This document shows, one piece after another, positions 748-11,502 of a DNA stretch of 64,000 nucleotides (its first letter is position 1; the number at the start of each line of letters is the position of its first letter). A program made the position numbers and the translations under genes. Source of the DNA: Styela clava. Taxonomy: Eukaryota. Under the pieces are notes generated by a model. It saw only the letters and a list, made by a program, of their open reading frames with translations. It searched no databases and was not told the origin of the DNA. Location: NCBI RefSeq assembly GCF_964204865.1, contig NC_135262.1, positions 15,128,001 through 15,192,000 of the forward strand, given 5' to 3'.

Positions 748-2874
748 TTAGTGTTCTTTAGTTTTATCTCCTTGTAGAGGAGGACCAATTAATTTCACAA
801 TATCATCATAATTTAATACTTCTTTACTTAAAAGTTCTTTTGATAATATATCTAATTTATCCCTGTTGTTTTCAAGCAAGTCAGAAGCACGCTTATGGGC
901 ACTGAACACAGTTTTTTTCACCTCATGGTCCATTGTAGTTTGTAAAGCATTACTATAAGGTCTCACGAATGACTCATCATCACTTGGATAAGATAGATGA
1001 CCGATTGTCGGATTCATTCCATAATACTTAACTTGAGCATATGCCATATCAGTAGCTTTTTTCAAGTCATCTTGTGAGCCTTGTGTCGTAGTTCCAAACA
1101 CTAAATTTTCAGCAGCCCTTCCAGCTAATATCATACTCATAATATCCAGTAATTGAGGCCTGGTTACTAGTTTTCTTTCAATCGGTAAAGTTTGGGTGTA
1201 CCCGAGAGCAGATTTTGTTCTTGGAACAATGGAAATTTTAACTAAGGAATCTGTGTGCTTTGACAGCCATCCAACAAGAGCATGGCCAGCTTCATGAACA
1301 GCTACAATTTTCCTTTCTTCTGTAGAAAGGGAAGATGACTTTTTCGCTGATCCTGCTAACACCCGTTCAAATGCCTGTTCAAAGTGTTTAGTATCAATAT
1401 AAATATCCTTATTCCTTGCAGCACATATAGCAGCTTCGTTACAAACATTGGCAATATCTGCTCCACTCATTCCAGGAGAAAGATCTGATAGTCTTTCAGA
1501 ATAGCTTGTAGAAGGTTTGAATAGTTTCAAATTTTTCATGTGCTGTTCAAAAATTCCTTTACGCTCTATTTTTGTAGGAAGATCAATTGAAATATGTCGG
1601 TCAAACCTACCGGGACGCAGTAATGCTTTGTCCAGCATATCAGCTCGATTCGTCGATGCCATTACTATCACATTGTGCCTGTCGCTAAGCATACCATCCA
1701 TTTCTACCAATATTTGATTTAGTGTCTGATCTTTCTCAGATGAATTGGAACCCATAGATTCTTTTCCAGATCTTTTTGCTCCAACGGCATCCAACTCATC
1801 AATGTAAATTATACAGGGAGCTAAGGATCGTGCTTCCTTGAACAGTTCCCTAACCCTTCTAGCCCCAAATCCACCGATCAGTTCTACAAAATCAGAACCT
1901 GCTTTTGATAGGAAAGGAACATCAGCCTCAGAGGCAACAGCTTTTGCGAGAAGCGTTTTTCCGACTCCTGGAGGACCAGTTAAAAGAATGCCTCGTGGCA
2001 TTTTTGCTCCTAATTTTTCATATTTTTCAGGCTCTTTCAAAAAATGAACAAATTCCATTACTTCTTGTTTTGCTTCTGTGCAACCAGAGACATCTCGGAA
2101 TCTCACACCTGTAGCAACTGTTATTGCAGAACTTTTTGTTGTCATCATATTGGAAAGTCCGCCAGAACTCATTTTGCCTAAGGACTTGAACAATCGTGGG
2201 ACAGCAAAAATAATTAATAAAGCAAATACCAAAAAAGTACCGGTAAGCAAAGCCATGTAATTAATGTCCCAGTACACAAAAAGAATTTTATCTGTTGGAC
2301 TTATTCCCAAATTTTTCTCTGCACTGCGCACCAAACTTTCAAATTCACTCGCACTTTTAATATTCACAACTTTCATAATTGGAATGACAACTTTGCTGCC
2401 TTGATACATGGCATCATTGTGAAGAAAAACTGTCGCAGAATGATTATCAGCCTCTTGATTGATTATTATTCTTTTAACTTCTCCTGATGGAAGCACTTCT
2501 TCAAGGAATTCTTTAATGCTTATGTGGCGGAGATTTGGTGAATTTGAACGATTGAAGGCTATAATACCAGAGATGAATATTGCTGCACTGGTGAGCCAAA
2601 GGATTCGCTTGAATTTTTCATGTGGTGGCTTTTCCCCATTGTCGCTAGTACTATTAGAATTTGTTTGAATTCCATGCTTGGAATAATACGAAACAATTTT
2701 TTTAAAGTTTGGTTCAAGTATAAATACCTGCCGGTTTGTTAAAGGCAGTTTATAGCAGCATTTCTCAATCTCATGTGTGTTAGCTCCAAGAATTCTCCTA
2801 TGTGCTAACAAAAGTATCTTGTCCAATTTTGGAAACAGGCACGCTGTTCTCCACATGAAGCTGCTGAATAACAT
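748..2874 (-). CDS. SPG7: paraplegin, mitochondrial m-AAA protease subunit (FtsH family, peptidase M41), intronless, 708 aa
   Basis: Two N-terminal TM segments, Walker A GPPGVGKT, Walker B IIYIDELD, SRH STNRADMLDKALLRPGRFDR and Zn motif HEAGH. Paraplegin-type signatures: FVELIGGFGARRVR, DRHISIDLPT, ERVLAGSAKKS. Confidence 0.95.
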   Translation of the reverse strand: MLFSSFMWRTACLFPKLDKILLLAHRRILGANTHEIEKCCYKLPLTNRQVFILEPNFKKIVSYYSKHGIQTNSNSTSDNGEKPPHEKFKRILWLTSAAIFISGIIAFNRSNSPNLRHISIKEFLEEVLPSGEVKRIIINQEADNHSATVFLHNDAMYQGSKVVIPIMKVVNIKSASEFESLVRSAEKNLGISPTDKILFVYWDINYMALLTGTFLVFALLIIFAVPRLFKSLGKMSSGGLSNMMTTKSSAITVATGVRFRDVSGCTEAKQEVMEFVHFLKEPEKYEKLGAKMPRGILLTGPPGVGKTLLAKAVASEADVPFLSKAGSDFVELIGGFGARRVRELFKEARSLAPCIIYIDELDAVGAKRSGKESMGSNSSEKDQTLNQILVEMDGMLSDRHNVIVMASTNRADMLDKALLRPGRFDRHISIDLPTKIERKGIFEQHMKNLKLFKPSTSYSERLSDLSPGMSGADIANVCNEAAICAARNKDIYIDTKHFEQAFERVLAGSAKKSSSLSTEERKIVAVHEAGHALVGWLSKHTDSLVKISIVPRTKSALGYTQTLPIERKLVTRPQLLDIMSMILAGRAAENLVFGTTTQGSQDDLKKATDMAYAQVKYYGMNPTIGHLSYPSDDESFVRPYSNALQTTMDHEVKKTVFSAHKRASDLLENNRDKLDILSKELLSKEVLNYDDIVKLIGPPLQGDKTKEH

Positions 2875-4092: not shown

Positions 4093-4548
4093 AAACATCT
4101 GTGAGCGGAAAGTCTATAAACCCTATAGTCCGATAAGTTTAAGTTTATTTCAACTCCATAATCCTGTAATCAGCATAACAGATAGTTGATACCAGTAGTT
4201 GATACAAAAACAAATAAATAAACAAACAAATAAATGAACGTCCATGCTATAAACAGATGGGTATACATTCGGACATTATACTGTTAAATGACACAAGTTA
4301 ACTAAACGCCATTCCATTTTGAAATGATACGTCAGACAGGACCGTATGGCGGCCGGCGGGTATCAGGTACCTGAAGTACGGTACACGACGCAAGTAGGCT
4401 ACTCCTCGTTGGCCTAGCTCAACCACTTTGTCATTTCTCACATGTCATTTCTAAACCCCACCTGAATACGCCATCCAAAAAATTACATCACTCAGTCACT
4501 GCGAAGTCGCAGGTGAGGGTTAGGCGTGAAAATCGTTAGGCGTTTAAA

Positions 4549-4657
4549 TAGGACAGGATAGATATATTTATCCCGGGGGAGAGGAAAGGGACAAGACGGC
4601 TCAATCATACAATCATATGGCGAACCACGGCCTCTCGTACGGTTACCATTCCAGGTC
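4549..4657 (-). mobile_element. tRNA-derived SINE, 3' half (split by the MULE insertion)
   Basis: Reverse complement of the SINE 3' end seen at 33235-33344. It continues at 9189-9418 across the 9-bp TSD. Confidence 0.85.
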
Positions 4658-4663
4658 GGGTTC

Positions 4664-5145
4664 CTTTAATTACCGGAACGGACCCTAAATTACCGGAACG
4701 GGGTGGAAAACATACATAAACCTACCGGAACGGACCCTCAGATGTCTTGCAAATGTCATTTCATATACTTCCATGCAATTTTTATATTAAATCGGCAAAC
4801 TTGGGGGGTACAGTGGTAAATTTAATTTTCTTTAATTACCGGAACGGACCCTAATTTGCCGGAACGGAGTGGAAAACCAACATAAATCTACCGGAACGGA
4901 CCTTTAGATGTCTTGCAAATGTCATTTCATATACTTCCTTGCAATTTTTATAATAAATCGGCAAACTTGGGGGGGACAGTGGTAAAATTAATTTTCTTTA
5001 ATTACCGGAACGGACCCTAATTTGCCGGAACGGAGTGGAAAATCTACATAAACCTACCAGAACGGACTTGTAGATATCTTGCGAAGGACATTTTATGTCC
5101 CTCCAAGCGATTTCCCAAGTGAAATGGGAAAATTGAGGGGGATAG
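4664..5145 (+). repeat. 166-bp tandem subrepeats (~3 units) in the left TIR, mirrored at ~8340-9182
   Basis: Units start CTTTAATTACCGGAACGG at 4664, 4830 and 4996. Each unit has three CCGGAACGG-type motifs. Confidence 0.9.
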
Positions 5146-5916
5146 AATGATAGAAAATAACAATTTCATTTTACGCCACCTAGCGGATGTAAATTGAGCA
5201 ATGAATTCCTGAATCATCTCTTATCAGTATGAATTGATGATAAAAATTGATAATCAAAACCCTCTTACATGTTATTAGTCTTTAATTTTCCTTGTAGATA
5301 AGATAACGTAGTCATAGATTCAGATTGAAACAAATAAAAATTGTTTCCACAAACATTCTTGTGCAGGTATTGTAACTATGTAGCACAACATGAATATCCC
5401 CCTAAATCTGTCATTATTAGAGATGATGTTGTTATTTAAGTTCGTGTCACCCGTAAGACTGCTGTTCCGGCACTGTAATCTACCTTGATAGATTGCATAT
5501 TGCTTCGTGTCCATATATTTAAGCATCGTCCTCTTGTTTACCTACATACATACAAATCTGATCCTCTAAAATGACTCCTTCAAAATTTACTAATATGCTA
5601 TTGACTTAGCTGCAGATTGTTAATTTCCCCACTAGGTCTCGAAATTTATACGCAAAATATAAAACGTGCTTTCTTATAATTTTTCACCAACTTAAACGTA
5701 GGAACTCATGCTCAAATTCGTTCTGCCAGTGGAGGTTTTTGTATTTTACAAGAGTAGAAAAAAATAGAAAAAATACAACAAAAAAATGAATAGACAAAAA
5801 TAGAATATTGATAACTAACTAACGGGAAGTGGGAACGATTAAAAATATTCAAAAAAAAGGAAAGAACCGAAGAAATGAAAGAATAAACAAAACACGAGAA
5901 ATGCGTAAAATTCAAC

Positions 5917-7008
5917 TTAGTTTTTGTTTCTTGTCTTGAGTTTCTTTACAGTTCGGGTTTTTTCGGATCGAAGTCGTTTTCTTTGACACGTTTTTTTGCC
6001 ACCAGATGAATTTACTCCGATCATTACCATTCCATCCGATGACAGCAACGATTTTCGTTGATTAATTGAAGAGGAGGTAAGAAATCTTTTTAGTAAATTT
6101 AATTTTTCTTCTTTTGATTTCCCAAAATATTTGTTTGGGGCAATGAAAAAATGATTAAACTCAGTTGCCAGACGGTAATTGCCTACTCCAATAAGCGCAC
6201 GCTCCACATCTTTATATTGGGCTTTTGTGTGAGCAATCAGCCGCTCTATGAGAATATCTATGTTTGTAGATTTCCAATCAATCATGTGCTTGAGTACGTG
6301 GTTCATACTTTCCGTGTTGTTGTTAGTCCAGTGTGCGCTAAGCTGTTTGTTCTTTGTTACGCAAAAAATACCCTTTTTTATCAGCGGTAAAACCCGTCTT
6401 ACCAAATAATTCCTCAATGACGGGTTTTCTGTATTGTGTAGTAGATCCGAAGTCTTTGTTGCAAATGATTCTTCATTTTCAGTTGTTATTATCCCTGTAC
6501 GTCCAAAGATGGTCGCATTAATGCGTCTTCTTTCGCTCACATTCAGCCCCACTTTATTTTTCATAAATTCCTCGACATTACTCTTCAAATGACGAGAGCA
6601 TATTATATTAGTTGAATCAGGCAAGTTTTCAGAGATTGATTTACGCATAGCTTTTTCATCATCAGTTCCTATTGTCAGTAATTTTGTATCAACGTCGTTT
6701 AAAGCACCGGAAAGTAATGAGAAAAATTGTATAACTTGATGATTGTCTAACAAACATTGCAACGATTTGGTCAAGTAAGGGCGACCTGCTAACATCCGTA
6801 ACGCCATGTCGTAATCGAACTTTTGATTCGGGCACAAGCACCTTGCACATAAAAAGTGCATGTCTTTCTTGCTCCATACTTCCATGACTTTTGGTTGTTC
6901 TCCAAGACAGGAAGCATGTGTCCAGGTCTCACACATTTCACATTCAATGCACTCGTCAATGCATTCAATGGAACAGGTGGCACATGGGTATCTCAATGCA
7001 CTAGACAT
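5917..7008 (-). CDS. PHD finger fused to the C-terminal part of a MULE DDE transposase (363 aa, probably internally deleted)
   Basis: C9xxC12...C23xxC26-x4-H31xxC34...C54xxC57 PHD pattern. GTDDEKA (second catalytic D), CSRH (MULE CxxH) and WTNNNTESMNH (catalytic E). Basic C-terminal NLS-like tract. Splice acceptor at 7047-7048, upstream of the ATG. Confidence 0.8.
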   Translation of the reverse strand: MSSALRYPCATCSIECIDECIECEMCETWTHASCLGEQPKVMEVWSKKDMHFLCARCLCPNQKFDYDMALRMLAGRPYLTKSLQCLLDNHQVIQFFSLLSGALNDVDTKLLTIGTDDEKAMRKSISENLPDSTNIICSRHLKSNVEEFMKNKVGLNVSERRRINATIFGRTGIITTENEESFATKTSDLLHNTENPSLRNYLVRRVLPLIKKGIFCVTKNKQLSAHWTNNNTESMNHVLKHMIDWKSTNIDILIERLIAHTKAQYKDVERALIGVGNYRLATEFNHFFIAPNKYFGKSKEEKLNLLKRFLTSSSINQRKSLLSSDGMVMIGVNSSGGKKTCQRKRLRSEKTRTVKKLKTRNKN

Positions 7009-8650
7009 AGCGTAGTAGGCTGTCTTTTGACGTTTGCGTTGAATATCTGAACCAGGAAATGGAACTCTTAGTTAAAAGTAATAAAGGTATATTTGATATC
7101 GACTAGTACAATTAAAAATTATCATTCTGACTCATTCATATATTATATACATTCAAGATCTTAGCGTTTTGCAACAAAGACACTTCTAAAATATGGACAC
7201 CATTTCCTCATTCGAAGTAAACTTCAATAAATATATTAATCCTTATATAAAATACAAGTTATCTGAGCTAGCAAAAGTTGTACATACCGATAAAATCGTC
7301 GAACTGGCTTGGTATTCTATCCTTGGCACGTTGATGGAGAAGATATAAAAACTAGGAGTACAATTACAAGAATCGTAAATAATCTGCTTTAAATTCCTGA
7401 TGCTAATAGTTCGAATATTAATTCGAAATGGCACATAGGTCGCTTTTCTGTCGCAAAGAAATCTCCGGCCATGACGAACAGCCCAGCGCCAGTCCTGCTG
7501 CATTTCAACTTTGGAGGCTTTGAACTTTGAACCGTCCTCGCTATAAAGGCAATAGCGACAATCGTTTTCAACTCGTGGTCAACTCTCGCATTTTCCTATG
7601 CTGAAATTTTAAATTCAAGTATTTTGTCAAATATGTTAACGTTATTGATATATTAAAACATTTATGTATGGTTTTATATATTTACCGATATATATATATA
7701 TATATCACATATATATCATATATAAATATATATCACAAATATTTCATATTTGATGAAATACAACGACATCCCCACTTTCATCATAACTTAAGGTCACGTA
7801 CTTCAACCAGTTCCAATATAAAATGTTTAGCTACATAGTTACAATGCCTGCACAAGAATTTTGTGGAAACAATTTTTAGCATAATAGTAAATTTTGAGAG
7901 AAGTCATTTTAGAGGATCAGATTTGTATGTATGTAGGTAAACAAGAGGACGATGCTCAAATATATGGACACGAAGCAATATGCAATCTATCACGGTAGAT
8001 TACAGTGCCAGAACGGCAGTCTTTACGGCTGACAGGAACACGAACCAAAATAACAACATTATTTTTAATAATGACAGATTTAGGTGGATATTCATGTTGT
8101 GCTACATAGTTGCAACACCTGCTCAAGAATGTTTGTGGAAACAATTTTTATTTGTTTCAATCTGAATCTATGACTACGTTATCTTATCGACAAGGAAAAT
8201 TAAAGGCTAATAACATGTAAGAAAGTTTTGATTATCGATTTTTATCATCAATTCATATTGATAAGAGATGATTTAGGAATTCATTGCTCAATTTACATCC
8301 GCTAGGTGGCGTAAAATGAAATTGTTATTTTCTATCATTCTATCCCCCTCAATTTTCCCATTTTACTTGGGAAATCGCTTGGAGAGACATAAAATGTCCT
8401 TCGCAAGATATCTACAAGTTCGTTCCGGTAGGTTTATGTAGGTTTTCCACTCCGTTCCGGCAATTTAGGGTCCGTTCCTGTAATTAAAGAAAATTAATTT
8501 TACCACCGTCCCCCCCAAGTTTGCCGATTTATTATAAAAATTGCAAGGAAGTATATGAAATGACATTTGCAAGACATCTAAAGGTCCGTTCCGGTAGGTT
8601 TATGTTGATTTTCCACTCCGTTCCGGCAAATTAGGATCCGTTCCGGTAAT

Positions 8651-8988
8651 CTGGCAACGGGCTATGCGTTAGGAATACGCTCGCCACCGCACCTCTAATT
8701 ACTCTGCGTGGGTTCGCAGGTTCGAATCCCATGCAGGGATGGTTATGTGCGAGAGGATTGCTGGACTCCTCGCCGTCGTTGGGTGGTTCACGTAACCGCT
8801 GGTCGGTTACGGCTTCTTCCACCACCAAGTCCATGCTTCCGAAAACAAACAATACAGTAAAACTAATCCCATACCGGTACCCGACTTGGAATGGTAACCG
8901 GACGAGAGGCTGTGGTACGCCATATGGATAAGCCGTCTTATCAGCTTTCCTCTCCCCCCGGGATAAATATGTAAATCCTATCCTATCC
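8651..8988 (+). mobile_element. tRNA-derived SINE inserted in the right TIR of the MULE
   Basis: B box GGTTCGAATCCC at ~8719-8730, (ATCCT)n tail and TAAT duplicated at the junctions. Absent from the left TIR. Nearly identical to 33002-33344. Confidence 0.9.
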
Positions 8989-9188
8989 TAATTAAAGAAA
9001 ATTAAATTTTACACTGTACCCCCCCCCCCCCCCAAGTTTGCCGATTTAATACAAAAATTGCATGGAAGTATATGAGATGACATTTGCAAGACATCTAAAG
9101 GTCCGTTCCGGTAGGTTTATGTATGTTTTCCACCCCGTTCCGGTCCGTTCCGGTAATTTAGGGTCCGTTCCGGTAATTAAAGGAACCG

Positions 9189-9418
9189 TTCCAGGTCGGC
9201 TATGGAATTGGTTAGACAGTTATTTGTTTTCGGAAGCATGGACTTGGTGGTGGAGGAAGCCGTAACCGACCAGCGGTTACGTGAACCACGCAACGACGGC
9301 GAGGAGTCCAGCAATCCTTTCGCACATAACCATCCCTGCGAACCCACGCAGAGTAATTAGAGGTGCGGCGGCGAGCGTATTCCTAACACTTAGGCCGTTG
9401 AGCCCCATCGCCGCGCCA
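9189..9418 (-). mobile_element. tRNA-derived SINE, 5' half (host of the MULE); B box deleted
   Basis: Collinear with the SINE at 33002-33240. The B box is lost by deletion between CCTGC direct repeats. Confidence 0.85.
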
Positions 9419-11502
9419 GTATCCAGTTAGTAACATTTATTCGTGCCATATTTTACTTTGGATTCAATCCAAATTTCTTCAGATTCAAGCTGAATAAAAA
9501 TCCTCTATCATTTTGCCTGTACCGGTACCCCGTTTGCAAAGAAATGACCATGCATCGAATTGATGGATGCTTTGGAGACCCTTGACCTCTAAATATTGCC
9601 AGGGTCCGGTCATTCTGAAAAATATATTTTAACCCTTTCGTTCATGACTTTTTCGCTTACAACGAAAAAATAATTTTTGTATTGGAATGAAGTATTTACG
9701 ATGTCAATATCATATATACTGAAAATGATGACGTATTGATCATCGTGTTCTTTGACGTTGTTCCGGAACAACATCATAAGAGGAAGGTGGACGAAATGGA
9801 CTATATGTTCCTGAGTCCCGAAAAAACGCTCTAGTTTACAGTTTATGTAAAAACATTTCAGACCAATTATTTCTCTTTTCCGATGATAAATGATTGCTAT
9901 ACTTGTCCACACAGCGAGCAAAATCCGCTTCTACAGATTTTTTTTATGGATAGAAAATGTCCAAATATATTTATATCGCTAGATTGAGATATATTGGGTA
10001 GTCTGGATAAGATGGAGACATTGATGACGATTGTCGTACTAGTTCTTTTATAGATAAAGGTGGCGATTTTGCAATAAGAGACTCAAATGTACACCGATTC
10101 TTTTAATGATTACCCGCACTAGCACGCAGTTCAAAATCGATGCATGGACGACAGCATATCAAAAAATCTACACCTCCGGTGTTCGCTATACTCTCCAAAC
10201 ATCGTCTATGTAATTATTTTCAGATACTGATCTTTCCTGTGACACACATATATATATACAGTATATATGTGTGTTAAACTGGGCTCATGTGAAACTATTA
10301 GATATACGCGCCAATATACGAATTCTTCTCTTAGGTGCCTCACAGATTTATCACAATTCCAGAAACATTTGTTTGCAATTAGAGCAGGGCATTTTTAAAT
10401 ACCTATATAGTGGTTTCAGAGTTGAATCGAATATTTTTCGGATCAAATATCGAATACTTAGAAAGATTGGTAATGGAATGCGACTTTTTTTTTATTGCAT
10501 TACCTAAAACCAACTCCCAAAACATACACTTCAGCATTCAGACAGTTGGTTTTGTGTTCACACAGAATACGAAACATGTTTCATCAATAAATCACTCGCA
10601 ATGACCGACCTATATCTTCAGTGAACAAAAAAATATGGTGTCTGAACGATTCCAAAAATTTACTATTTGATTTAAAATGCGCAACCGTATTCCAATTTCG
10701 CAAAGTTAAAAATCAAGTGCATAGCACGATTTATCATCCCTTTAATATATATTTTAATTCAACTTGGAGTGTTCTGCAAGATGAGACTTTAAATTATCAT
10801 CAAAAGCAGCTGTAAAATAGCGGATTGGGAAGGGTCATTTCTAAAGTTGCGTGTAACATATAACCAGGAGAGTGTCTAGGTGGGGGCAATAGGGGCAGCC
10901 GCCACGGGAGGCACGATTTATAGGAGAGTTTGTTGCTTAGTTAGATGATTTAAATAATATTAATAATACAAATATTTCGGCCTTAATTGATCATGGATTG
11001 ATTCATACTCATTTATAACAACATCTACAAGTTGTTTATCTTTCTCATTATTTTTGAAGTTAGATATGAGGGGCATTACAATGATAAACTCGCTACGTGT
11101 AGCAAAAAAAATTGGCAGGTCCCTGCATGTAACGCAAGATTTTCTCTCTGGCGCATTCGAATTCCAGCATGTATTTTGGTATAATGTTTCCAATACCTTT
11201 TTAATTCCAAGCAGTAAGTGGGTAAATGGATGTAGGCCTGTTGTTTCTGCAATTCAGTTGTTTAAATAAACTGCTGTAGGCAATCCTCTATGAATTGTAC
11301 GACCTCTTAGCGGAATACCGAAAATAAAATATTTCCCCAAATTTTATACTGCTAAATATTGCCATCCCATAATACATGATGTTGTTTTTCAACAACATTT
11401 ACACATAAGGCAACTACTCAATTGCCAAAGCAATGCAAAGCAAACGATTCCATCAATGTTCCAAAACTATAGGTACCAACCACAGCCATTTTTTTATGTT
11501 CA

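What the first reader, a model, noticed from the sequence alone, without database searches (positions are those of the whole stretch)
4658..9188. Foldback-like Mutator element with kilobase TIRs and a PHD-finger (chromatin reader) transposase
Seen: ~950-bp TIRs, a 9-bp TSD and an ORF starting with a complete C4HC3 PHD finger (including the W-x-H core) joined to MULE catalytic motifs. Known: PHD fingers read histone H3 tails, as in RAG2, and some MULE lineages such as Rehavkus have long repeat-rich TIRs and accessory domains. Inference: a chromatin-guided transposon family, here inserted ~1.8 kb upstream of a housekeeping gene start. Read-through of both TIRs would give ~1 kb of hairpin dsRNA, a potential Mu-killer-like silencing locus. 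I cannot tell whether this family has been described.
Basis: partly seen in the sequence, partly recalled or inferred. Interest (0 to 1): 0.75.

Follow-up and report, generated by a model that had tools for sequence, protein, structure and literature searches.

The report
Deleted foldback Mutator transposon copy
This stretch is a broken, non-autonomous copy of a sea-squirt "foldback" Mutator-type jumping gene whose intact relatives encode a transposase carrying a histone-reader-like PHD finger and a deubiquitinase-like domain; the kind is already catalogued, so the copy itself is ordinary.

Summary
Window 4658-9188 is a real DNA transposon with about 950-bp inverted ends, each carrying 166-bp tandem units. 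It has an exact 9-bp target duplication (TTCCAGGTC) and a 363-aa ORF that opens with a C4HC3 PHD finger.

The ORF is not a working transposase. It is an in-frame deletion product. One 6.05-kb copy elsewhere in the genome (RefSeq names the organism Styela clava) encodes a 971-aa PHD-OTU-MULE protein. The window copy lacks 1824 bp of that gene (residues 94-701), which removes the OTU domain, a beta-rich middle domain and the first catalytic Asp. pN/pS against the full copy is 0.8.

The element sits inside a high-copy SINE-like repeat, and another copy of that repeat is nested in its right end.

A profile of the family's N-termini matches Pygopus PHD fingers (E 2e-12) and other H3K4me readers, so the PHD call is supported. 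Histone binding is untested.

Published Rehavkus traits are a 9-bp TSD, a PHD finger, tandem repeats in long termini and a single ORF. All four are met. Sequence-level membership could not be tested because no Repbase sequences were available.

An earlier scan note on other DNA of this genome (s1-817530) names the same PHD+OTU+MULE fusion.

Verdict: new member of a known kind, modest interest.

The parts
4548..4657 (-). 3' part of a SINE-like high-copy repeat copy that the transposon split (host site)
   Evidence: Aligns to the reverse complement of the intact nested copy, 8879-8986 (inverted pairs I13 and I19).
4649..4657 (.). Left 9-bp target-site duplication TTCCAGGTC
   Evidence: Read. Identical to 9189-9197. 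Flanks are listed.
4658..5600 (+). Left (3'-side) terminal inverted repeat, about 943 bp. Its outer 500 bp are 166-bp tandem units (4661-5158) with 8 copies of CCGGAACGG.
   Evidence: Colinear with the full-length copy L021 at 97.6%.
5917..7008 (-). 363-aa ORF: the PHD finger (residues 9-57) fused in frame to the C-terminal 270 residues of the MULE transposase. It is a deletion product lacking the first catalytic Asp.
6729..6729 (.). Deletion junction. 1824 bp (608 codons, residues 94-701 of the 971-aa protein) are missing here relative to the full-length copy.
   Evidence: blastn colinearity and codon comparison.
7009..7876 (-). Upstream non-coding internal region (presumed promoter and 5' leader of the transposase gene)
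   Evidence: Colinear with L021 at 97-99%. Function is inferred.
7877..8650 (-). Right (5'-side) TIR, inner part, with two 166-bp units
8651..8988 (+). Nested insertion of a roughly 334-bp SINE-like repeat (8655-8988) inside the right TIR
   Evidence: Absent from the TIRs of the full-length copy. 40 of 40 scored genomic copies are 96-98% identical, out of 2616 first-look candidates.
8989..9188 (-). Right TIR, terminal 166-bp unit and terminus
   Evidence: (I7, I12).
9189..9197 (.). Right 9-bp target-site duplication TTCCAGGTC
9198..9400 (-). 5' part of the split SINE-like repeat copy (host site)
   Evidence: 9220-9400 aligns to the reverse complement of 8655-8852 (I5 and I10).

Best explanation
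Window 4658-9188 is a non-autonomous, internally deleted copy of a low-copy foldback-type Mutator-like (MULE) DNA transposon of an ascidian genome. RefSeq names the organism Styela clava.

The autonomous form is 6.05 kb and has one intact copy in this assembly. It encodes a single 971-aa protein with these parts:
- an N-terminal PHD finger, closest to Pygopus-type H3K4me readers;
- an OTU cysteine-protease / deubiquitinase-like domain with invariant Cys and His;
- a disordered linker;
- a beta-rich plus helical middle region, presumed to bind DNA;
- a C-terminal DDE RNase-H-like domain of the IS256/Mutator type.

Shown: the anatomy, the 9-bp duplication, the deletion, and the domain homologies.

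Inferred:
- The transposase binds the CCGGAACGG-bearing 166-bp subterminal repeats (8 sites per arm, in opposite orientation), pairs the two ends, and cuts and pastes with a 9-bp staggered target cut.
- The window copy lacks residues 94-701, including the first catalytic Asp, so it can move only if the full-length protein is supplied in trans.
- The PHD may tether or gate the enzyme on H3K4-methylated chromatin.
- The OTU domain may process the protein or remove ubiquitin.

The copy landed in a SINE-like repeat 1.8 kb upstream of an FtsH-type protease gene and later received another copy of that repeat in its right arm.
For: TIRs and tandem units.

CCGGAACGG motif: 16 matches, all in the two arms, against 0.06 expected; 0 of 100 shuffles reach that count.

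TSD:
- exact 9/9 here;
- exact 9/9 in the C13 copy, 8/9 in C10:2.93 Mb, and 7/9 in the full-length C10 copy.

Split-repeat 'empty site'.

Full-length copy L021:2328-8377 with a 971-aa ORF.

Deletion: a single 1824-bp in-frame deletion; the rest is colinear at 97.4-99.1%.

Pfam on the full protein: OTU 28.5 bits (cut-off 23.3) and MULE 28.1 bits (cut-off 27.6).

Invariant residues in 24 relatives:
- D654, D724 and E841;
- C745 and H748;
- OTU C136 and H275.

Foldseek on the AlphaFold model (mean pLDDT 79.9): ISCth4 (IS256-family) transposase E 4.4e-6, DUBA/OTUD1/OTUD3 E about 1e-5, Hermes E 4e-5.

PHD finger:
- the family profile against PDB puts Pygopus sequences in the top 9 places (E 2e-12 to 1e-9), followed by DIDO1, MLL1 PHD3, BPTF and RAG2 (7e-4);
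- every match listed for the 75-residue model is a PHD-type finger, with Pygo TM 0.60-0.68 and rmsd 2.5-3.0.

Own-genome copies: 55 TIR matches at roughly two dozen loci.
Against: - Pfam on the window ORF itself is sub-threshold for both MULE and PHD.
- Two of the six end pairs I examined (C1:4.11 Mb, C19) show no matching TSD.
- The full-length copy's TSD is only 7/9.
- Foldseek E-values for the isolated PHD model are weak (best 8e-3), and that model has mean pLDDT 71.5.
- No experiment or read data support binding of the repeats, histone reading, DUB activity or current mobility.
- No named Rehavkus or NOF protein turned up in the two word-indexed protein searches.
Confidence: 0.9

Rival explanations
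1. One reading: the family is chromatin-guided. The PHD finger reads H3K4me2/3 and steers or licenses integration near active promoters, as the RAG2 PHD does for RAG. That would explain the insertion 1.8 kb upstream of a housekeeping gene.
For: The profile of 10 N-termini hits H3K4me-reader PHD fingers first: Pygopus E 2e-12, then DIDO1, MLL1 PHD3, BPTF, CFP1, TAF3, and RAG2 at 7e-4. In Pygo-type fingers the K4me pocket involves a Trp before the Zn-binding His and an aromatic residue two positions before the first Cys (my recollection, not checked in a call). The matching Trp is invariant here (W29, 10 of 10) and the aromatic position is Y or F in 8 of 10 (Y7). The window copy lies 1784 bp from an FtsH-type gene start.
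Against: - There is no binding data.
- One insertion near one gene is no bias, and that insertion is in a SINE-like repeat.
- TSD sequences of four copies share no motif.
- About two dozen loci, with no annotation or chromatin maps at hand, allow no test.
- Many PHD fingers bind unmodified H3, other partners, or nothing known.
Confidence: 0.3
2. The inverted kilobase arms make this locus a Mu-killer-like source of hairpin RNA that silences the family.
For: The two arms can pair over about 900 nt at 93-97%. Nine runs guessed to be RNA hold 16-26% of the element's sampled words.
Against:
- Every copy of a foldback element has this potential, so the locus is not special.
- The right arm is interrupted by a 338-bp insertion.
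- Mu killer is a rearranged partial duplication transcribed from an outside promoter. No such rearrangement or promoter is seen here.
Confidence: 0.1
3. The 363-aa PHD plus C-terminal-half protein is retained for a function, for example as a truncated repressor of transposition or a domesticated chromatin protein.
For: The deletion is exactly in frame and the ORF is open over 363 codons. The PHD finger is intact.
Against: - pN/pS is 0.80, from 12 nonsynonymous and 4 synonymous differences to the full copy.
- One of those changes hits F737, which is invariant in 24 of 24 relatives.
- Only this one locus carries the fused form.
- It still has TIRs and a TSD, like any mobile copy.
Confidence: 0.05
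4. It is not a transposon but an assembly artefact or a local inverted duplication.
For: Long inverted repeats can arise from misassembly.
Against: The same termini occur at many unrelated loci with their own 9-bp duplications. The flanks rejoin into one repeat copy. A full-length coding relative exists.
Confidence: 0.01

Closest known systems
Rehavkus (Repbase group of MULE-related foldback DNA transposons)
   Same: [quoted passage not shown] All four traits are seen here.
   Different: - The reported hosts are Arthropoda and Annelida, and reported TIRs are 26-400 bp (PMC6446971 Table 1). Here the host is a tunicate and the TIRs are about 950 bp.
- An OTU domain is not mentioned in the passages I read.
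- No Rehavkus sequence was available, so relatedness is untested.
MULE transposases with accessory PHD or OTU domains (Babu et al. 2006, PMC1702500, passage read)
   Same: That paper reports MULE transposases fused to an OTU papain-like protease (Medicago) and, separately, MULE transposases of Ciona and C. elegans with a PHD finger. The authors suggest protease processing of a polyprotein.
   Different: There the OTU and the PHD are each C-terminal, occur in different proteins, and accompany WRKY-GCM1 and classic zinc fingers. Here both domains are N-terminal and sit in one protein.
Drosophila FB-NOF and other Mutator-type foldback elements (Tetris, Tm1)
   Same: They have long inverted termini built of tandem repeats. 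Most foldback elements are assigned to the Mutator superfamily (PMC4079207, passages). The ESM Atlas places a cluster named '120.7 kDa protein in NOF-FB transposable element' among the nearest, with the most shared features (174 of 256). Its members carry PHD (34%) and a cysteine peptidase, C48 (45%).
   Different: The Atlas score is only 0.80, which makes it a lead, not evidence. No NOF-named protein appeared. The protease family differs (C48 versus OTU).
Pygopus PHD finger (and the RAG2 PHD as a functional analogue)
   Same: Pygopus is the best solved-structure match of the family's N-terminal profile (E 2e-12). The shared motif is YPCGxC...C..C..WFH..C.G(L/M)TE. RAG2 is a precedent for a PHD reader coupled to a transposase-derived nuclease (recalled).
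   Different: Pygopus is a Wnt co-activator, not a transposase. RAG2 is a separate subunit of a Transib-type system. Histone binding is not tested here.

Membership tests
Mutator-like elements (MULE superfamily) | DDE transposase matching the Pfam MULE domain (PF10551) | tested here: met
   The full-length copy scores 28.1 bits against a cut-off of 27.6. The window ORF alone scores 20.6 bits, below the cut-off. All 9 of 9 long relatives match at E <= 0.01, 2 of them above the cut-off.
Mutator-like elements (MULE superfamily) | D, D, E triad with a CxxH motif after the second Asp (hallmark recalled from the MULE literature) | tested here: met
   D654, D724, C745, H748 and E841 are invariant in 24 of 24 aligned proteins. 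The window ORF lacks D654.
Mutator-like elements (MULE superfamily) | TSD of 9 bp (range about 8-11) | tested here: met
   Of the 6 end pairs examined, two are exact at 9/9 (the window and C13), one is 8/9, one is 7/9, and two show no match.
Mutator-like elements (MULE superfamily) | Catalytic fold like bacterial IS256-family transposases | tested here: met
   The top Foldseek hit is the ISCth4 transposase, E 4.4e-6.
Rehavkus | PHD finger in the transposase | tested here: met
Rehavkus | Tandem (minisatellite) repeats in or next to long inverted termini | tested here: met
   166-bp units x3 in each arm. Paralogous lineages in the same genome also have tandem-repeat TIRs.
Rehavkus | 9-bp TSD and a single ORF | tested here: met
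Rehavkus | Transposase sequence clusters with Rehavkus-1_HR / Rehavkus-1_TC of Repbase | not testable with these tools
   No Repbase or Dfam library was at hand. No hit or 64 carried that name.
PHD finger | C4HC3 ligand pattern with PHD spacing and a Trp two residues before the His | tested here: met
   C9 C12 C23 C26 W29 H31 C34 C54 C57 are invariant in 10 of 10 sequences.
PHD finger | Score at or above Pfam PF00628 gathering threshold (24 bits) | tested here: inconclusive
   The window ORF scores 14 bits, and the full-length copy shows no PHD row. Of 9 long relatives, 4 match at E <= 0.01 and only 1 reaches the threshold (P0014, 24.7 bits).
PHD finger | Profile and fold similarity to solved PHD fingers | tested here: met
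   The profile gives E 2e-12 to Pygopus, and 115 PDB sequences match at E <= 1; the 60 shown are PHD-finger proteins by name. The Foldseek matches shown are all PHD-type fingers, best E 8e-3.
PHD finger | Binding of a histone H3 tail | not testable with these tools
   Needs peptide binding assays.
OTU cysteine protease / deubiquitinase | OTU domain with catalytic Cys and His | tested here: met
   This holds for the full-length copy only: Pfam 28.5 bits against a cut-off of 23.3, C136 and H275 invariant, OTUD1 E 8.6e-8, DUBA and OTUD3 by fold. The domain is deleted from the window copy.
Mu-killer-like silencing locus | Transcribed inverted duplication giving hairpin RNA and small RNAs | not tested
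No run is on record as RNA.

The most novel reading that the evidence does not exclude
The Pygopus-like PHD, OTU and MULE-DDE architecture defines a large metazoan transposase lineage that has not been characterised. It has at least 1438 cluster representatives and is seen in tunicate, amphioxus, brachiopod and bivalve records. In this reading, methyl-lysine reading of H3K4 gates or targets integration, and a deubiquitinase acts on chromatin or on the enzyme itself. The unusually close match to the Pygopus finger would then reflect a shared origin: either capture of a host reader by the transposon, or donation of a transposon finger to the Wnt co-activator.
Probability: 0.2. Interest if true: 0.7.

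Novelty: new member of a known kind. Interest (0 to 1): 0.35.

Why it matters
For the window itself there are three practical points. It is a dead deletion copy, so the 363-aa 'PHD protein' should not be annotated as a gene. The nesting with a young SINE-like repeat shows that both families were active in overlapping periods. The copy-specific junctions give handles for testing insertion polymorphism and read-through RNA.

At family level, a transposase that carries a reader-type PHD finger next to a deubiquitinase-like domain is a natural system for asking how DNA transposons choose chromatin targets. It parallels RAG2. The proteins are currently labelled 'uncharacterized' in the named records I saw. 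In four full-text searches I found no paper describing this combined architecture, but Repbase entries and paper supplements were not visible to me.

Tried and rejected
- tRNA origin of the nested repeat: ARAGORN and Rfam (E <= 0.1) find nothing in 4300-9600. I therefore call it 'SINE-like' only. A B-box-like GGTTCGAATCC is seen by eye.
- Satellite expansion of the 166-bp unit: seven weak TIR-unit matches cluster at C6:21.7-22.5 Mb. I fetched two of the seven, and neither shows a tandem array. Rejected for those two.
- Kinship with Drosophila NOF: this rests only on an Atlas lead at score 0.80. No named NOF or Rehavkus protein appeared among the 16 and 17 hits. The search 'FB-NOF' + 'MuDR' found 0 papers.
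- Promoter bias was not attempted. There are about two dozen loci, no gene annotation and no chromatin data.
- The beta-rich middle domain (residues about 355-520) got no Pfam or PDB sequence match. I did not fold it on its own.
- Literature: 'Styela clava' + 'transposable elements' + 'Mutator' gave 0 papers. PMC2927773 is not held. Tm1 (PMC3169594) mentions neither PHD nor OTU.


Full report
WHAT IS THERE

The interval 4658-9188 carries long inverted arms. The left arm is 4659-5600. The right arm is 7877-8650 and resumes at 8989-9187. The pairings are 613 nt at 96%, 134 nt at 93% and 117 nt at 97% complementary.

The outer 500 bp of each arm is a tandem array of a 166-bp unit. One search finds three copies at 100/92/75% identity to the reference. 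Tandem Repeats Finder gives period 166, 2.6 copies and 91% matches.

Each unit holds the 9-mer CCGGAACGG. The 64-kb window has 16 exact matches, all inside the two arms. Eight lie on the + strand in the left arm and eight on the - strand in the right arm. The expectation is 0.06, and 0 of 100 shuffles reach that count.

Directly outside the termini (GGGTTCC...GGAACCG), TTCCAGGTC stands at 4649-4657 and again at 9189-9197.

INSERTION SITE AND NESTING

The 338 bp that split the right arm (8651-8988) are a copy of a roughly 334-bp interspersed repeat. A genome search gave 2616 first-look candidates. The 40 that were scored are all 96-98% identical.

The DNA on either side of the element is a second copy of the same repeat in the opposite orientation. 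Positions 4548-4661 align to 8879-8986, and 9220-9400 aligns to 8655-8852. The flanks therefore rejoin into one repeat copy interrupted at the 9-bp duplication, which works as a paralogous empty site.

So the transposon landed in one copy of this repeat and later received another in its arm. ARAGORN and Rfam do not recognise a tRNA in the repeat, so 'SINE-like' is a description, not a demonstrated class.

THE ORF IS A DELETION PRODUCT

The 363-aa ORF (5917-7008, minus strand) matches the window's own genome in two pieces at one locus on another contig. Residues 1-95 and 94-363 lie 1.8 kb apart there, inside one 992-codon open frame.

That locus (L021:2328-8377, 6.05 kb) has the same arms and 166-bp units and a single 971-aa ORF. 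A cluster look-up shows this protein is RefSeq XP_039265582.2, 'uncharacterized protein LOC120341177 [Styela clava]', on a contig of the same length as that piece of the assembly.

The window copy is colinear with this locus at 97.4-99.1% identity, with three exceptions:
- the nested repeat;
- a 36-bp indel;
- one 1824-bp gap.

The gap removes codons 94-701 in frame. Against the full copy the remaining codons show 12 nonsynonymous and 4 synonymous differences, giving pN/pS 0.80. One difference changes F737, which is invariant in 24 of 24 relatives. The ORF therefore looks like a young, unconstrained remnant.

DOMAINS OF THE FULL PROTEIN

Pfam finds OTU (residues 132-226, 28.5 bits, cut-off 23.3) and MULE (652-752, 28.1 bits, cut-off 27.6).

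An alignment of 24 long relatives (27-41% identical to the full-length protein) shows these invariant residues:
- OTU Cys136 and His275;
- D654, D724 and E841;
- C745 and H748.

The window ORF keeps D724, CxxH and E841 but not D654.

The AlphaFold model has mean pLDDT 79.9. It shows confident OTU and DDE domains, a disordered linker (285-352) and a beta-rich region at about 355-520.

Foldseek ranks these matches highest:
- the IS256-family ISCth4 transposase first (E 4.4e-6);
- the OTU deubiquitinases DUBA, OTUD1, OTUD3 and A20;
- Hermes.

A profile search of PDB sequences gives OTUD1 at 8.6e-8 and OTUD5 at 1.3e-6.

THE PHD FINGER

Pfam on the window ORF alone gives only 14 bits (cut-off 24).

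Among 9 long relatives, PHD is reported in 4 and reaches the cut-off in 1 (P0014, 24.7 bits). OTU is reported in 7 of 9 and MULE in 9 of 9.

Aligning 10 N-termini shows C9 C12 C23 C26 W29 H31 C34 C54 C57 invariant. The profile built from that alignment hits solved structures as follows:
- Pygopus PHD fingers in the first nine places (E 2.1e-12 to 9.6e-10);
- then DIDO1/DATF1, MLL1 PHD3, PPS, CFP1, BPTF, PHF2 and TAF3;
- RAG2 at 6.9e-4.

A 75-residue model built from seven own-genome sequences (mean pLDDT 71.5) finds only PHD-type fingers among the matches shown. E-values are weak, best 8e-3. Pygopus entries have TM 0.60-0.68 and rmsd 2.5-3.0 A.

Whether it binds methylated H3K4 is an inference. 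My recollection, not checked in a call, is that the Pygo K4me pocket uses the aromatic residue before the first Cys and the Trp before the His. The matching positions here are Y7 (Y or F in 8 of 10) and W29 (10 of 10).

FAMILY SIZE AND SPREAD

In this genome the 942-bp arm gives 55 matches at roughly two dozen loci. A handful of these are near-complete elements.

End pairs from six loci were read:
- two have an exact 9-bp TSD (the window, and C13 with CATTGTGGC);
- one has 8/9;
- one has 7/9 (the full-length copy);
- two have no match.

The protein query gives 85 own-genome matches. They include paralogous lineages at 26-35% identity with open frames of 908-1013 codons. Two that I fetched have arms of 0.8 to 1.8 kb built of 10/123-bp or 29-97-bp tandem repeats. 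Tandem-repeat foldback termini are therefore a trait of the whole group here.

Outside this genome the window ORF finds 1438 cluster representatives at E <= 0.001, 499 at <= 1e-10 and 87 at <= 1e-30. Named records come from Lingula, Branchiostoma, Sinanodonta, Dreissena and Elysia. All are 'uncharacterized', 'hypothetical' or 'MULE transposase domain-containing'.

COMPARISON WITH WHAT IS KNOWN

- Dupeyron et al. 2019 (PMC6446971, passages and Table 1) describe Rehavkus. Their table gives a 9-bp TSD, TIRs of 26-400 bp, one ORF, a PHD finger, a minisatellite, and hosts in Arthropoda and Annelida. They note it is known from Repbase only.
- A Tribolium preprint (10.1101/2024.12.02.626372, passages) calls Rehavkus foldback transposons with long inverted termini carrying variable numbers of tandem repeats.
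- Babu et al. 2006 (PMC1702500, passage) report MULE transposases with a C-terminal OTU domain (Medicago) and others with a C-terminal PHD finger (Ciona, C. elegans).
- Dias et al. [quoted passage not shown]

The kind is therefore known. The element meets every published Rehavkus trait I could test. I could not compare sequences with Repbase, and the relevant supplement was closed.

What may be less described is the N-terminal pairing of a Pygopus-like PHD with an OTU domain, and the tunicate host. Four full-text searches found no paper on that architecture.

The ESM Atlas points to a cluster named after the Drosophila NOF-FB 120.7-kDa protein, whose members carry PHD and a C48 peptidase. The score is 0.80, so this is a lead only.

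WHAT STAYED UNCHECKED

Transcription, read-through of the arms and small RNAs were not checked.

Also unchecked are target preference with respect to chromatin, histone binding, OTU activity and current mobility.

An earlier scan note on another piece of this genome (s1-817530) names the same PHD+OTU+MULE fusion. I reached that architecture independently.

VERDICT

It is wrong in taking the ORF for a transposase, and it goes untested on chromatin guidance and silencing. The window element is a dead, nested copy of a known kind of transposon. The family-level architecture is the part worth a specialist's follow-up.

Noticed in passing
window 8655-8988 (+); 4548-4657 and 9198-9400 (-): A roughly 334-bp high-copy interspersed repeat. 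A genome search gave 2616 first-look candidates, and 40 of 40 scored copies are 96-98% identical. It has a B-box-like GGTTCGAATCC, but ARAGORN and Rfam call no tRNA. It looks like a young SINE family, and it both hosts the transposon and is nested in it.
   Followed up: partly
window 748-2874 (-): A single uninterrupted 708-aa ORF for an FtsH-type AAA + peptidase M41 protease (SPG7/AFG3-like). It is intronless over the whole coding region.
   Followed up: partly
L061 (G000:C5:7308200-7318199), L062 (G000:C4:14974100-14984099): Paralogous PHD-OTU-MULE lineages (about 30-35% aa identity) with open frames of 908-975 codons. Their inverted arms of 0.8-1.8 kb are built from 10/123-bp or 29-97-bp tandem repeats. 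Six loci share a 908-codon open frame, which suggests a recently active family.
   Followed up: partly
L033 / L034 (G000:C19:1470593 and C19:2313986): Two copies of the element's end have the same 25-bp outside flank. This suggests a segmental duplication that carried the insertion rather than two transpositions.
   Followed up: no
G000:C6:21.78-22.50 Mb (seven places): A cluster of roughly 120-185-bp fragments 75-82% similar to the 166-bp TIR unit. The two I fetched (L064, L065) are not tandem arrays.
   Followed up: partly
P0004 (Lingula anatina relative): The precomputed Pfam list carries PF27108.1 in addition to OTU and MULE. The local Pfam copy did not report that family, so its identity is unknown to me. 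It might cover the beta-rich middle region.
   Followed up: no
L021:168-1307 (+): A 379-aa ORF lies about 1 kb upstream of the full-length element on contig C10. It was not examined.
   Followed up: no
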